Positions 2,340-6,939 are shown, counted from the stretch's first letter. The stretch: DNA of 64,000 nt from Saccostrea echinata (GCF_033153115.1 NW_026889771.1:682001-746000), one strand, 5' to 3'. Notes: generated by a model not told the origin, from the letters alone. Numbers and translations: made by a program.

Positions 2340-5300
2340 TCAAGGACAGCCATTTCTTATTATGTCGGAGCCTCGGTATTCCCTTTCTGTGACTTTGTTA
2401 TCTGAAAGTCGAATAAAAAGAAATATATTAGTATCCAGCGACAATGAAGATAGTAATATTTGGATACACTTTGATTTCCCATCTTACTCAGCAAAGTAAT
2501 GCACTCAGAAATCTGAAATGTATACTATAATCGAAAATAAATGTATTGCAAAACAACTTATGCTGATGTTTAATAGGAATGTTTGCATAAAAATTTGACA
2601 AAGTCTTGCTGTTCTTGAAGATTCTTAATATTTTTTATTCTTTCTATATGTAAACGTTTCTTTAACATCAACCTCCTATTTTGGGCACATCTAGTCCCGG
2701 AGTGTGCCTAGTTTGGGGGACTATACTTAAGGCTGGTTTGATATTTATTGTTGGCCCCTTATTGTGGCCATATGCTAGTTTTTGGGGACGATACTGGGGG
2801 TTGGTTTGATATTTATTGTTTACCCCTTATTGTGGCCCTATCTAGTTTTGGGGACTAAACTGAAAATTGTTTTTATGATTATTTGACTTTTCGTTGCCCT
2901 TGCATCCTTGAATAAAAATGATTTGATTTTTTTTCATTTATGTTCCGTTATAAATTCTACCCTCTATTATGGGTCACTTTATCCCCAGGAGCCATGATTT
3001 GAACAAATTTAATTTTAATCTATACTTTTAGAATGAACGCTTCACATATATACCTTGTTTTTTTTTCTGACTTCTTGATTCTTGAGAGAAATGCTTTTAC
3101 GCATGTTCATGTATATAACTATTCATTACATTACTTTACTTATTTATTTACAATTTTGAATTTCTACTTTTTATTTGCAAACTGACTACAGTTTAATGGT
3201 TTTAACTTTTATGAAAATTCCTGATACTCAATGACAACGGCATTCTTCAAACCTTATTCCAAAAACCTGTGTTTGTAAATATTGGCACGAACTCTGTTAT
3301 CGTTAATGTTTACGTTTTACTGGATGTATTTGATTCATCACTGACCACAAACTGTCAACACCGACATGTTAGTTTTGCTTTCAGATATCTCTTCTTTGAC
3401 TTTTCCTTGACTAAAGTTTTAATTGATATTTGTAATGAGCACACCTCAGATTTCCTATTTTCCTTGAATGTTAAGGAAAAAAAAAATCCTAAAAGTGAAA
3501 GGATGTATGACAATCAAACACGACCCAAAATGCGTAGTTTTGATAAGAAGAACATGGTGGGCAAAATGCCTATTGTGTGTCAAATAAAAAGTTTCAAAAA
3601 GAGAAAAAAATGGACAAAATTTTCTTTGATATTTCATTTAACAGTAACATATACTTTATGTAAAATCCCCAGAATTTGCAAAAATCTCACAAGATTGAAA
3701 TATTTAGCATACACACACCAAAGAGGTAAAAAATGATCATATTTACATACTATAACACATATTTTAATTCATATGAGTGGGTCTTCGCTACATATTTCTA
3801 AAAAAATTATATTCAAAATATGCGTAAAAATGTACAATTTTTGGGCAACGAAAGCATGGAACACTATTCCTTAAAAAAAAAGACTTTTATGACACAATAT
3901 TCGTATCTTTCCAAGAAATTATCGAAGTCCATTTAGTCAAGGGTCATATCACAACATGATTTAAATGCCACCAGCTGTCATGAGCTGCATTACAAAGAAG
4001 ACCTTGACACTTTGTCAGAATGGAATAAATGTATGAGATGTATGTTAAAATTTCGCATTAAGCGATTGAGGTGCTATATGAAAACCCTCTATCCTTCCGT
4101 GTTCAATGATTCAGAAATGAAAAAAAAAAGAATTAGATAGACTACGCGATCAGTATGTGCTGGTCCCAGCTGACAAAGCAGGTAACAACATTGTCTTTGT
4201 TTGTAAGGCTCATTATTTGAATTGTATTTTAGAGGAACTGGGATTTAATTCTACAAGTGGTAATCCAATTTATACCCATAGCTCCCCTTCTAAGGAGGAA
4301 CTTTTTTCAAAATCATATGTCAGCTTTGAATATTTTTATTATTCCCAACAACCAAAATGAATTTGAATTACCATATCTATATCGGATTCCAAAGCTTTAT
4401 AAAAATCCTTACAAACAAAGATACATAGCGGGTTCCGGTAAGTGTTCTACCAAGCCTTTTTCTTTACGCCTTACTAAAATATTAACAGCAGTGAAGGAGA
4501 AACTTCAGGAGTACTGTACAACAATATATTAGAGAAGTGGTGTAAATCAGATGTAGATACATGTACTTAAAAATTCCAAGGAACATTTGGAAAATTTAAA
4601 ATCACAGAATTTTACCAAAATCCATAACATAAAAACTTACGACTTTTCAACTCTATATACAACTATTCCTCATGATAAAATTTAAGTCCGGGCTTTTTGA
4701 CATCATTGACAGCTTCTTTTTCAATAAAAATGGAACTCGTAAATTTACCTACCTTGTCATTGGTTATATGCAAAATTATTTTGTTAAAATATTCTTATTG
4801 TACACTCAAGTACTCTGAAGTTGATATTAAAAAGATGCTTGAGTTTCTGATTGACAATATCTATGTGGTTTATGGAGACCAGGTCTTCCAACAATCTGCT
4901 GGAATTCCCATGAGTACCAATTGCGCCCCGTTATCAGCAGTCCTTTTTTGTATTCATATGAAGCAGCATTTATTCCAAATCTTACACAAGAGAAAAGAGA
5001 ATGTCTTGATGTGGCCTTCAACTCGACATTTAGATATATCGACGACGTATTGTCAATAAACAATAGTTATTTCCATTCATATGTCGACACGATATATCCC
5101 AGTGACTTGAAATAAAAGATACCACAGAGTCTATACAACTGTTCCATATTTGAATATTTTACCAGGAAAGACGTTCATGGTAATCTAAAAACAAAGCTTT
5201 GTGATAAACGTGACGACTTTAACTTTTCAATCGTCAACTTCCCTTACTTATGCAGCAATATACCCTTATCACCTTCATATGGGGTGTATATCTCGCAGCT

Positions 5301-6939
5301 GATTCGATAAGCAAGAGCATGCTCTACGTATGAACACCTCTAATTTCTAAAACAATGACCTTGTCATCAAATGACCTTGTCAGCAAATACAATCAATCAC
5401 TAAATCAAATGCTGACTGACGTGTTTCATACTAATTGTTAGTTCATTTACACACTGAATTGTAGACAGATTTTTCCGTTATTTTCCGAAGATGACAAGGA
5501 GCACAAGGCGGGTGTGTCCGGTCGGCAGGGGATGCTCACTCCTTCATGGCACTTGATCCCACCTCTGATTTTATTTTGTAGGTCTGTGTTTTCTTTGCTC
5601 CCGATTTGTATTGTTTTAATTGACTTTGAGCTTGAATACTGTAGGTTATCACCGTATTTCATCTGCATACATTTTTAGAAATCATAGAAAGATTATTTCC
5701 GAAAGAATTTTCAGCAGAAAAGATTTTGGTTGTCATAATTCCATACCTTTCAAAAATAAGAACTTTACATACTAAATTCACATGCTCAATAAGACTTTTA
5801 TATATTTGAAGTTATAGGCATTTTGCAAGTCTTGTTCCCCCATCTTCTTTTCAGATAAAAGAAGTTTCTGATCAAGTTTTTATAATATATCAGTCTGAAA
5901 CGCTCATGTAAGTCATGGAATTCTGCGGAAATTTTTTATAGTTATAAACTTCAAATCTTTGTCCAAGTCCCTTTAAATTCTAGTTATTCTTGAAGAATAA
6001 CTTTGGTTAAAATGAACTGGAAAATTCACATACGTAACAAATATATTGAGACAACAAAATTTAAGTGTGTGAAATTGTCAAGAAAGAGTTGTCTTGCTTT
6101 ACCTTTGTTAATATCAAGTTGTTGAAAGTAGGAGGCAAAATTAGTTTTGCCTGTCATTTCTATCAGAGTTGAGATTTCACTCTCACTTATTTCGCCATCA
6201 ATATTCAGGTCCAAAGAAGAAAATTTGCAGATATCAAAACGGTTTACATCCTGAAAATGATAAGTGATAAAATAATAACAAGTTTTACTGTCAGTCGTAT
6301 TTTTCACACCGTTTATAATGGTATAAGTGTTTAAAATGGAGTCAGCAATGAAAAGATGAACAGGAGAATATTGAGTTTAATATTGTAGGTAACTATTATG
6401 ACAATGTTTAACTTATTCTAAAACCTTTCAAGCAGGTAAATAAATAACATTGATATCGATCGAGGCATTATTGTTGTCAGAAAATTCGAAAACTACTTAT
6501 GTCTCAAATCTTCAAACATTACACGAGTAAAAATTCCTGTTCAATAACCTTGATTTTGTCACAAAGAGTCATATTTCTAACAGTTCAGAAAAACGTTTGC
6601 ATAGATAAGTCTATGTTTAATATATCTATATCTTACCTTATCTGCTGACCTCTTTCCTATGATATCCAAAACTTGTTGTATTTTGTCAATAATCTCCTTT
6701 GCTTTTTCAGCACGTTTCTTGACCTTATCAAAAGCCTGTCTAAATCTTCCCCAAGCGCAGACATCACCCGGAATCAGAAAAATCACCAAAGAGAAAATTA
6801 GGAGGGTTCGAAACTAAAGATGAAAGAGAACAAGGAATTAGATAAAAAAAAAAAAGGTTCATAAATTTGAATTAAACAGCCGGAATGAAATACCTTTAAT
6901 TATACTGAAGAGCAACTTAGTATTTACCATCCTTACCAT
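2340..6939 (-). CDS. Secreted precursor: signal peptide + cationic amphipathic (antimicrobial-peptide-like) 32-mer + GKR + two-EF-hand C-terminal domain, ~129 aa, 4 exons
   Basis: Exons on minus strand: 6939-6937 (ATG/gtaagg; alternative donor after 6928), 6813-6637, 6250-6103, 2401-2340, all GT-AG with matching phases (0,0,1). Protein MFRTLLIFSLVIFLIPGDVCA|WGRFRQAFDKVKKRAEKAKEIIDKIQQVLDII-GKR-SADKDVNRFDICKFSSLDLNIDGEISESEISTLIEMTGKTNFASYFQQLDINKDNKVTEREYRGSDIIRNGCP*. EF loops are DLNIDGEISESE and DINKDNKVTERE; the second is completed only across the 3.7-kb intron. TATA at 7000-6994, AATAAA at 2240-2235. Confidence 0.88.
3990..5665 (+). mobile_element. Degenerate Penelope-like retroelement (RT) in intron 3 of the peptide/EF-hand gene
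   Basis: Frameshifted pieces LVPADKAGNNIVFVCK, YRIPKLYKNPYKQRYIAGS, GIPMSTNCAP, FRYIDD. Same family and same 3' tail as the 32.2-33.4 kb copy. Confidence 0.9.

What the first reader, a model, noticed from the sequence alone, without database searches (positions are those of the whole stretch)
2340..6939. Hidden precursor joining an amidated cecropin-like helical peptide to a disulfide-closed two-EF-hand pro-domain
Seen in sequence: four in-phase exons give signal peptide | WGRFRQAFDKVKKRAEKAKEIIDKIQQVLDII | GKR | acidic domain with two EF loops (DLNIDGEISESE, DINKDNKVTERE) and exactly two Cys flanking them. The 32-mer has no Cys, 9 K/R versus 5 D/E, an N-terminal Trp and helical periodicity of hydrophobic residues. 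Established: G-K-R signals convertase cleavage plus PAM amidation; W-initiated amphipathic helices typify cecropin/piscidin-like AMPs; mussel mytimycin precursors carry a C-terminal EF-hand, but behind a Cys-rich peptide. Inference: a linear amidated defence peptide whose acidic EF-hand partner acts as a Ca2+-dependent inhibitor or storage chaperone. The peptide sits on its own phase-0 exon, so the EF cassette may be reused with exchangeable payloads. The ORF track misses the gene because the last exon lies beyond a 3.7-kb TE-filled intron.
Basis: partly seen in the sequence, partly recalled or inferred. Interest (0 to 1): 0.85.

Follow-up and report, generated by a model that had tools for sequence, protein, structure and literature searches.

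The report
Oyster helical-peptide precursor with EF-hand pro-domain
A real, spliced oyster gene, filed in public annotation only as "uncharacterized", belongs to a small oyster gene family. Each member joins a secreted, mostly positively charged, cysteine-free peptide to a conserved calcium-binding tail, the layout of mussel antimicrobial-peptide precursors, but no function has been tested.

Summary
On the minus strand, four exons joined at GT..AG introns encode a 129-aa protein. It has a signal peptide, a Cys-free 32-mer starting with Trp, G-K-R, and a 73-aa acidic domain with two EF loops and exactly two Cys. One 459-nt contig from a public run joins all four exons at exactly the predicted junctions.

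The gene is not hidden. It is RefSeq XP_061182431.1, "uncharacterized protein LOC133190755", of Saccostrea echinata.

It belongs to a family: 8 loci with an intact EF exon plus one frameshifted copy in this genome, with relatives in S. cucullata and Ostrea edulis, all unnamed. Across 10 aligned members the K-R-S site, both Cys and EF-loop residues are invariant. The peptide part varies widely (K-rich helix, R-rich, Pro/Arg-rich, one acidic). Peptide charge tracks the opposite charge of the tail (r = -0.78, n = 11).

The best reading is an antimicrobial-type precursor that combines myticalin-like gene layout with a mytimycin-like EF-hand extension. Function, cleavage, amidation and Ca-dependent caging are inferred. 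The window's own peptide is the weakest candidate among the Trp-initiated peptides (+4, amphipathicity not above shuffles) and has no cecropin profile match. I found no paper describing the family. The scan noted this same stretch once before (s1-805414).

The parts
6937..7009 (-). Exon 1: 5' UTR plus the ATG start codon (6939-6937). Donor GTAAGG follows directly.
   Evidence: Sequence. The contig of run X1 has 73 letters on this side of the 6937|6813 joint. The 5' limit is approximate.
6754..6813 (-). Exon 2, first part: residues 2-21 of the signal peptide (hydrophobic core, then V-C-A before the predicted cleavage).
   Evidence: Translation. The -3/-1 small-residue rule is met here and in the paralogues. 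No SignalP was available.
6658..6753 (-). Exon 2: the Cys-free 32-residue peptide (residues 22-53). It starts with Trp and has net charge +4.
   Evidence: AlphaFold2 predicts a helix over residues 22-56 at low confidence.
6649..6657 (-). G-K-R: a dibasic convertase site with a Gly amide donor.
   Evidence: K-R-S is invariant in 10 of 10 aligned family members; Gly precedes it in 6.
6637..6648 (-). Last four codons of exon 2 (SADK): the first residues of the acidic extension. A phase-0 donor follows.
6103..6250 (-). Exon 3: Cys68 (6229-6227), EF loop 1 (6211-6176), the linker helices and the first four residues of EF loop 2. It ends in phase 1.
   Evidence: Pfam EF-hand_5/EF-hand_7. The same intron position is found in all 8 paralogues.
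2402..6102 (-). Intron 3 (3701 nt). It holds decayed retroelement-like ORF fragments on the plus strand (about 4157-5115, with a YIDD-type motif) and multi-copy sequence.
   Evidence: ORFs, which had no Pfam hit. Very high multi-copy contig depth over 4772-5606 in run X1.
2340..2401 (-). Exon 4 coding part: completes EF loop 2 and its exit helix, then Cys128 (2348-2346), Pro129 and the stop TGA (2342-2340).
   Evidence: Homologous last exons sit downstream of six paralogue EF exons (P7106 and P7099 return the same one); none was found for P7101.
2235..2240 (-). AATAAA, the likely polyadenylation signal, about 100 nt after the stop.
   Evidence: Read directly in the sequence. The 3' end was not mapped.

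Best explanation
This is LOC133190755 of the rock oyster Saccostrea echinata. It is an expressed four-exon gene and a member of an oyster gene family, seen by name only in Saccostrea and Ostrea.

The gene encodes a secreted prepropeptide with four parts:
- a signal peptide;
- a Cys-free peptide, usually strongly cationic and starting with Trp, predicted to be helical;
- an invariant Lys-Arg-Ser processing site, often preceded by Gly;
- a conserved, acidic, two-EF-hand domain bracketed by two invariant cysteines.

Inferred mechanism:
1. In the Ca-rich secretory pathway the acidic EF-hand pair neutralises, and probably clasps, the basic helix, much as a calmodulin lobe clasps a target helix. This keeps the peptide harmless to the producing cell.
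2. A furin/PC-type convertase cuts after Lys-Arg.
3. Carboxypeptidase and peptidylglycine amidating monooxygenase (PAM) then leave a C-terminal amide in the Gly-bearing members.
4. The freed peptide acts as a membrane-active host-defence peptide.

Shown here: the gene, its splicing, the family, the conserved site, the two Cys, the EF-hand fold and the charge pairing. Inferred: secretion, cleavage, amidation, the disulfide, the clasping and antimicrobial activity.
For: - Splicing: one contig joins all four exons at GT..AG borders. The exon-2 search found no second strong match in the genome, so a retrocopy is unlikely.
- Annotation: the product equals RefSeq XP_061182431.1.
- Family size: 8 intact EF exons plus one frameshifted copy in this genome, all with the same phase-1 intron inside EF loop 2.
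- Relatives occur in S. cucullata and Ostrea edulis.
- Invariant in 10 aligned members: K-R-S, Cys68, Cys128 and EF-loop residues.
- Peptides have 0 Cys and net charge +4 to +14 in 10 of 11 members. The EF domains carry -5 to -27, and the two charges are correlated (r = -0.78).
- Paralogue and orthologue peptides are strongly amphipathic (z 2.7-4.7).
- In the closest paralogue pair the peptide region has dN/dS 0.98, against 0.15-0.20 for the EF exons.
- Fold: the EF pair is modelled at pLDDT 73-87 and matches calmodulin, troponin C and KChIP lobes.
- The helix plus the EF pair aligns over 90-91 residues with the BM-40/SPARC EC domain (Z 5.5-5.6). Pfam SPARC_Ca_bdg scores 27.7 bits, above its cut-off of 22, over residues 24-118.
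- Precedents: mytimycin has a signal peptide, a peptide, a dibasic site and a 75-aa EF-hand extension (PMC8004829). Myticalins have the same exon logic and Gly-dibasic amidation (PMC5577615).
- A solved calmodulin-melittin complex shows that an EF lobe can bind a cationic lytic peptide (8aht, listed).
Against: - There is no activity, peptidomic, tissue or infection-response data.
- The only transcript evidence is one contig, about 96% identical, from a run whose RNA label is a guess.
- The window's own 32-mer is only +4, and its amphipathicity is not above shuffles (z = 1.1). The laid transcript carries a further Lys-to-Glu change, worked out by hand.
- One member's peptide is net acidic.
- The orthologue peptide is as conserved as the EF domain (27 of 32 residues), which does not look like an arms race.
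- The helix is modelled at low confidence (pLDDT about 50-60).
- The charge correlation is not corrected for shared ancestry.
- Structural Z scores of 5-7 are in the range the tool calls common.
Confidence: 0.5

Rival explanations
1. A secreted calcium-binding protein that works uncleaved, for example in the extrapallial or shell matrix or the extracellular matrix. On this reading it is a minimal SPARC-EC-like module, and the N-terminal helix is a structural part of the domain rather than a cargo.
For: - Pfam SPARC_Ca_bdg is above its cut-off for P0007 (27.7 bits against 22, residues 24-118) and for P0016 (24.2 bits).
- BM-40/SPARC EC chains align over 90-91 residues that include the helix (Z 5.5-5.6).
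- Several members have acidic tails rich in Asp and Glu.
- The peptide is conserved between orthologues.
Against: - The K-R-S site is invariant and lies exactly between the helix and the EF pair; Gly precedes it in 6 of 10 members.
- The N-terminal part varies in length (32-83 aa) and in type, including a Pro/Arg-rich form, while the EF pair stays fixed.
- dN/dS is about 1 in the peptide against 0.2 in the EF exons.
- The SPARC disulfide pattern differs (my own knowledge of 1SRA).
- SPARC is not among the best 60 sequence matches to solved structures.
Confidence: 0.2
2. A precursor of a signalling peptide (neuropeptide, hormone or pheromone). The comparison is the snail HCS2/pleurin precursor, which carries amidated peptides followed by an EF-hand region.
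For: - G-K-R amidation signals are typical of neuropeptides.
- A molluscan neuropeptide precursor with an EF-hand region is on record (Bogdanov et al. 1998, cited in PMC8398477).
- The window peptide is well conserved between two Saccostrea species.
Against: - The peptides are long (32-83 aa), highly basic and very unlike one another among paralogues. They lack the PRX-amide motif of pleurins.
- Tandem, lineage-restricted expansion with a pseudogene is more typical of effector families.
- Four of ten members lack the Gly.
Confidence: 0.12
3. The EF-hand domain is the functional product, for instance a secreted Ca- or metal-binding factor. On this reading the basic N-terminal part is merely a disposable pro-piece or sorting signal.
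For: - The EF exons are the part under purifying selection (dN/dS 0.15-0.20).
- The EF domain is the only part conserved across the whole family.
Against: - A disposable pro-piece would not be expected to keep Trp at its first residue in 8 of 11 members, a strong positive charge and high helical amphipathicity.
- Known bivalve precursors with this layout release the N-terminal peptide as the active part (PMC8004829, PMC5577615).
Confidence: 0.1

Closest known systems
Mytimycin precursors (Mytilida; PMC8004829)
   Same: - The order of parts: signal peptide, mature peptide, dibasic site followed by Ser, then an anionic C-terminal extension of about 75 aa (73 aa here).
- The extension carries two EF loops, read by eye in the paper's alignment.
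- Both are bivalves of Pteriomorphia.
- The role of the extension is unknown in both.
   Different: - The mytimycin peptide has 12 Cys and is antifungal; here the peptide has no Cys and is predicted helical.
- The mytimycin extension lacks the two bracketing Cys that are invariant here.
- The spacing between loop starts is 35 residues there against 32 here.
- Identity by eye is only about 30%, which is normal for any two EF-hand pairs, so specific kinship is untested.
Myticalins and modiocalins (Mytilus, Modiolus; PMC5577615)
   Same: - Linear, Cys-free cationic peptides in a multigene family.
- A conserved signal peptide and Lys-Arg site with a hypervariable mature region.
- Frequent Gly-dibasic amidation.
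- One exon holds the signal peptide, the mature peptide, the dibasic site and the first residues of the anionic extension, and the first intron lies at the start codon.
   Different: - The myticalin extension is described as a moderately conserved anionic tail of 35-75 aa, with no EF-hand reported.
- Myticalin peptides are rich in Pro, Arg and Tyr.
- The start codon lies in exon 2 there, and at the end of exon 1 here.
- Sequence kinship was not tested.
Cecropin-, moricin- and piscidin-type linear amidated helical peptides
   Same: - Trp at or near the N-terminus.
- A basic N-terminal half and a more hydrophobic C-terminal half.
- C-terminal Gly as amide donor.
- Size of 30-45 residues.
   Different: - No match to the Cecropin profile.
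- Only a sub-threshold Moricin match in paralogue P0016 (E 0.004, 17.3 bits against a cut-off of 27.6).
- Those families have no EF-hand pro-domain.
BM-40/SPARC extracellular calcium-binding (EC) domain
   Same: - A secreted, disulfide-stabilised EF-hand pair preceded by a long helix that packs on it. The packing is from my own knowledge of Hohenester et al. 1996; PDB 1SRA and 1BMO are listed.
- Pfam SPARC_Ca_bdg is above its cut-off.
   Different: - SPARC has two disulfides at other positions, a follistatin-like neighbour domain and no dibasic site between the helix and the EF pair (own knowledge).
- The structural match is middling (Z 5.5-5.6).
HCS2/pleurin neuropeptide precursor of gastropods
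   Same: A molluscan secretory precursor with amidated peptides at the N-terminal side and an EF-hand region at the C-terminal side.
   Different: - Its peptides are short PRX-amide peptides in several copies.
- It is expressed in neurons.
- No sequence was available here for comparison.

Membership tests
EF-hand superfamily (paired EF-hand domain) | Profile match above the curated cut-off, and canonical 12-residue loops with ligands at positions 1, 3, 5, 9 and 12. | tested here: met
   - EF-hand_5 scores 32.4 bits against a cut-off of 25.9 for P0007.
- Loop 2 fits PS00018. Loop 1 has all the liganding positions but Ile at position 4.
- The modelled EF pair matches calmodulin and troponin C lobes.
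Cecropin family (Pfam Cecropin) | Sequence match to the cecropin profile. | tested here: not met
   No Cecropin hit for exon 2 at E <= 1 or for P0007, P0016 or P0156 at E <= 0.1.
Cecropin-like physico-chemistry | A cationic, amphipathic helix with an N-terminal Trp and an amidated C-terminus. | tested here: inconclusive
   - Trp1, Gly-Lys-Arg and net +4 are present.
- The best 18-residue hydrophobic moment is 0.57, z = 1.1 against shuffles, for the window peptide, while relatives reach z 2.7-4.7.
- The helix is predicted at low pLDDT.
Mytimycin | A mature peptide of about 54 aa with 12 conserved Cys. | tested here: not met
   0 Cys in the peptide region of all 11 members examined. The mytimycin definition is from PMC8004829.
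Mytimycin | A dibasic site followed by an anionic extension of about 75 aa with EF-hand motifs. | tested here: met
   K-R-S followed by a 73-aa two-EF-hand domain of net -5, compared with the sequences in the paper's supplement.
Mytimycin | Specific sequence kinship of the EF-hand extension. | not tested
   No mytimycin sequence was available by reference. By eye, identity is about 30%, which does not decide it. No mytimycin-named protein appeared in the profile search.
Myticalin-type linear antimicrobial-peptide precursors | Signal peptide, hypervariable Cys-free cationic peptide, conserved Lys-Arg and anionic extension, with signal peptide, peptide and site on one exon. | tested here: met
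   for the family here; PMC5577615 for the definition. This shows the same organisation, not sequence kinship, which was not tested.
SPARC_Ca_bdg (PF10591) | Profile match above the gathering score. | tested here: inconclusive
   P0007 scores 27.7 bits and P0016 24.2 bits against a cut-off of 22, but P0156 scores 17.3 bits, below it. SPARC is not among the best 60 matches to solved-structure sequences. Structural Z is 5.5-5.6.
HCS2/pleurin precursors | Repeated short peptides ending in PRX-amide. | tested here: not met
   The peptide ends in Ile-Ile before G-K-R, and there is no PRX motif. The definition is from PMC8398477.
Antimicrobial peptide (functional class) | Demonstrated killing or inhibition of microbes, and expression in immune or barrier tissue. 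| not testable with these tools
   There are no activity or tissue data. The one run that holds the transcript has no recorded library.

The most novel reading that the evidence does not exclude
Oysters may use a cathelicidin-like strategy in mirror image. One conserved, disulfide-closed two-EF-hand pro-domain would serve as a Ca2+-switched cage. It would grip a Trp-anchored basic helix as a calmodulin lobe grips melittin, behind a fast-changing set of cargo peptides (Lys-rich helical, Arg-rich, Pro/Arg-rich).

This pro-domain might share its origin with the EF-hand extension of mussel mytimycins. That would define a pro-domain-based superfamily of defence-peptide precursors across pteriomorph bivalves, and it would explain the so far unexplained mytimycin EF-hand.
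Probability: 0.2. Interest if true: 0.75.

Novelty: new variant of a known kind. Interest (0 to 1): 0.55.

Why it matters
[quoted passage not shown] Oysters are described as having scarce antimicrobial peptides (title of PMC3390580).

If the reading holds, this is a lineage-restricted multigene family of linear, often amidated cationic peptides in rock and flat oysters. That would add a new effector class for species of aquaculture importance. It would also give a second case of an EF-hand domain attached to a defence-type peptide.

That second case makes the unexplained role of the mytimycin EF-hand extension testable: does the domain bind and silence its own peptide, and does Ca2+ control that binding? 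If instead the proteins work uncleaved, the family is a minimal secreted EF-hand module, which is of lesser interest.

Tried and rejected
- **Binding prediction.** I ran the EF domain (residues 57-129) with two Ca and the 32-mer. The score was 0.00 and the tool gave no verdict.
I therefore had no DNA of the S. cucullata and O. edulis orthologues, could not compute dN/dS between species, and could not identify the samples behind the unnamed Logan/ENA fragments.
- **Single-sequence homologue search** with P0007 found only itself.
- **Foldseek against the PDB** gave no match at E <= 0.001, only generic EF-hand lobes.
- **Atlas look-alikes** all scored below 0.9 and are leads only.
- **Retroelement-like ORFs in intron 3** had no Pfam match.
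- **Literature.** Searches for the locus names and for an oyster EF-hand/antimicrobial family found no description. The search for the SPARC helix paper found nothing usable.
- **The other EF-hand precursor noted in this genome** (s1-803030) did not appear among the family's EF exons at E <= 0.01. It is not a member by that test.
- **Rejected: retrocopy.** A retrocopy as the source of the spliced contig is unlikely, because exon 2 has one strong match in the genome.
- **Rejected: cecropin kinship.** There is no profile match.
- **Joined exons.** Whole-protein work used the public protein P0007, which a search tool returned. A quantitative comparison with mytimycin sequences was left out because they exist here only as text in a paper's supplement.
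Full report
**1. What is in the sequence**

Read on the minus strand, the window holds a small four-exon gene.
- Exon 1 ends with the ATG at 6939-6937, followed directly by a GTAAGG donor.
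- Exon 2 (6813-6637) has 59 codons. They encode the rest of a signal peptide (hydrophobic core, then Val-Cys-Ala), a 32-residue Cys-free peptide starting with Trp, Gly-Lys-Arg, and four residues of the next domain.
- Exon 3 (6250-6103) carries a Cys, a 12-residue EF loop, two helices and the first four residues of a second EF loop. It ends in phase 1.
- Exon 4 (2401-2340) lies 3701 nt downstream. It completes the second loop exactly, adds its exit helix and ends Cys-Pro-stop.
- An AATAAA lies about 100 nt further on.

The peptide has 9 K/R against 5 D/E and no Cys; the acidic domain has exactly two Cys.

**2. Is it spliced as proposed?**

Yes. One public run (X1, label 'RNA?', library not recorded) holds a 459-nt contig that skips 6814-6936, 6251-6636 and 2402-6102. 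Each skipped stretch has GT..AG ends on the minus strand, and the borders are exactly those predicted.

The contig differs from the window at 12 of about 325 exon letters, so it comes from another allele or a very close relative. By hand, the listed differences include Pro16Thr, Lys34Glu and Glu80Val.

The exon-2 search found only one strong match in the whole genome. A retrocopy is therefore an unlikely source, and mRNA is the simplest reading.

**3. Identity**

A profile built from the EF exon and its paralogues (A1) was searched against 1.84 billion proteins. It returned a 129-aa protein, P0007, that equals the spliced product. The cluster look-up names it XP_061182431.1, 'uncharacterized protein LOC133190755', of Saccostrea echinata. 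This species is a rock oyster of the family Ostreidae, within Pteriomorphia.

So the gene is missed only by a plain ORF list. It is present in RefSeq, without a function.

Because a tool returned this protein, all whole-protein analyses used it by id.

**4. It is a family**

Six-frame searches of the genome with the EF exon and with its profile found eight intact copies and one frameshifted copy:
- four in tandem on the same strand at C22:634, 648, 663 and 688 kb (the last is the window gene);
- three intact copies plus the broken one at C22:7.09-7.11 Mb;
- one on C29.

All share the acceptor, and all share the phase-1 donor inside EF loop 2. For six paralogue EF exons the downstream scan returns a short last exon with the pattern D-x-x-V/L-T-x-x-E ... 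C. P7106 and P7099 return the same exon, which lies 8 kb from P7099, and none was found for P7101.

Upstream exons with a signal peptide followed by Trp and an Arg/Lys-rich stretch were found for six copies.

Annotated relatives occur in S. cucullata and Ostrea edulis. Their labels are 'uncharacterized', 'EF-hand calcium-binding domain-containing protein 1-like' or 'S100-G-like'. No named hit comes from Crassostrea/Magallana or Mytilus.

**5. What is conserved and what varies**

In an alignment of ten full-length members (A2), the invariant columns are:
- Lys-Arg-Ser just before the EF domain;
- both cysteines;
- key residues of both EF loops.

Gly precedes Lys-Arg in six members.

The peptide between the signal peptide and Lys-Arg is 32 to 83 residues long and has no Cys. 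Its forms include a Lys-rich helix (this gene), Arg-rich heads with Gly/Ala/Val-rich tails, a Pro/Arg-rich form and one net-acidic form. Eight of eleven start with Trp.

Peptide net charge (+4 to +14, one at -2) rises with the negative charge of the EF domain (-5 to -27). The correlation is r = -0.78 for n = 11, not corrected for relatedness.

In the closest paralogue pair, dN/dS is 0.98 in the peptide region, which also has a 21-residue length difference, against 0.15-0.20 in the EF exons. One of that pair may be decaying, because its signal peptide looks damaged.

Between orthologues the picture is calmer. The S. cucullata protein is 83% identical overall and keeps 27 of 32 peptide residues.

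**6. Fold**

AlphaFold2 run on A2 gives mean pLDDT 66.6. The EF pair (residues 70-129) is modelled at 73-87, and a long helix over residues 22-56 at about 50-60.

Foldseek and VIA-align match the EF pair to calmodulin, troponin C, NCS-1 and KChIP lobes. Sequence searches of solved structures give the same generic EF-hand proteins.

The longest structural alignments, 90-91 residues including part of the peptide helix, are to the BM-40/SPARC EC domain (1BMO and 1SRA, Z 5.5-5.6). Pfam SPARC_Ca_bdg is above its cut-off for P0007 over residues 24-118 (27.7 bits against 22).

In SPARC, from my own knowledge, a long amphiphilic helix lies on an extracellular, disulfide-stabilised EF pair much as a target peptide lies on calmodulin. 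That is a structural precedent for the clasping idea. The Z values are in the range the tool calls common, so this is a lead and not proof.

The distance between the two Cys in the model could not be read, because no coordinates are given.

**7. How it most likely works**

The layout matches two bivalve precursor types on record.

Myticalins have a conserved signal peptide, a hypervariable Cys-free cationic peptide, a conserved Lys-Arg and an anionic extension. Signal peptide, peptide, site and the first residues of the extension sit on one exon, and Gly-dibasic amidation is frequent (PMC5577615).

Mytimycins have a 23-aa signal peptide, a 54-aa peptide with 12 Cys, a dibasic site and a 75-aa extension with EF-hand motifs. 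The paper says the function of that extension 'remains unknown' (PMC8004829). Its supplement shows two EF loops after an R/K-R-S-type site.

The oyster family combines the two: a myticalin-like cargo and exon plan, with a mytimycin-like EF-hand extension that here has two invariant Cys.

I therefore read it as a defence-peptide precursor. The acidic EF pair masks the basic helix until a convertase cuts after Lys-Arg, and the Gly-bearing members are amidated.

Cleavage, amidation, the disulfide, Ca2+ dependence and antimicrobial action are all inferred. The binding prediction returned no verdict.

The window gene itself is the least convincing peptide among the Trp-initiated members. It has net +4, its hydrophobic moment is not above shuffles (z = 1.1), and it gives no cecropin profile match. 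Paralogue P0016 (+13, z = 3.9) has a sub-threshold moricin match.

**8. Rivals**

- An uncleaved SPARC-EC-like secreted Ca-binding protein. This is supported by the Pfam and structural matches and by orthologue conservation. It is weakened by the invariant dibasic site and by the free variation of the N-terminal part.
- A signalling-peptide precursor like snail HCS2/pleurin, which also ends in an EF-hand region. It is weakened by peptide length, charge and diversity, and by the lack of the PRX-amide motif.
- The EF domain as the real product.

Tissue expression and peptidomics would separate all of these.

**9. Novelty and verdict**

I found no paper describing this family, and the public records carry no functional name. 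The parts are known kinds; the combination and the taxon are new. I therefore rate it a new variant of a known kind, of moderate interest. It offers a second system in which to test what an EF-hand pro-domain does in a defence-type precursor.

The scan's index lists this same stretch once more (s1-805414). It also lists an unchecked note on another EF-hand peptide precursor elsewhere in this genome (s1-803030), which is not a member of this family by the profile test.

Noticed in passing
window 14442-15368 (+) and 35205-36038 (-): Two intronless ORFs (308 and 277 aa) match the rhodopsin-family 7TM receptor profile (7tm_1, 55.8 and 59.2 bits, above the cut-off of 30.5). These are likely GPCR genes neighbouring the peptide gene.
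   Followed up: partly
window 32390-33478 (-): A 362-aa ORF with a sub-threshold reverse-transcriptase match (RVT_1, 23.1 bits against a cut-off of 29.6). It is probably a decayed retroelement.
   Followed up: partly
window 4157-5115 (+), inside intron 3: Overlapping ORF fragments with retroelement-like motifs (a YIDD-type motif) but no Pfam hit. Run X1 has hundreds of contigs here at summed depth in the thousands, so this is a high-copy repeat.
   Followed up: partly
window 2712-2841 (+): Two adjacent copies of a 62-nt unit (85% alike, 68 nt apart) inside intron 3.
   Followed up: no
G000:C22:7089914-7090058 (L028, L029): A copy of the family's EF exon split over two reading frames. It is a probable pseudogene at the edge of the second cluster.
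   Followed up: no
G000:C22:645569-645637 region (L014:5569-5637, minus strand): The paralogue at 648 kb (P0009, 180 aa) has an extra exon between the peptide exon and the EF exon. That exon resembles the C-terminal half of the window gene's peptide and carries the K-K-R-S site, so it looks like a partial internal duplication of the cargo.
   Followed up: partly
P0158 (S. cucullata, XP_062585265.1): One family member carries a Pro/Arg-rich stretch (repeated R-P-R/P-R-P) in place of the helical cationic head. This recalls proline-rich antimicrobial peptides.
   Followed up: no
G000:C22:634-635 kb (L013, L025): The paralogue at 634 kb has an intact EF exon and last exon, but its signal-peptide region looks damaged and no public protein model for it turned up. 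It may be decaying.
   Followed up: no
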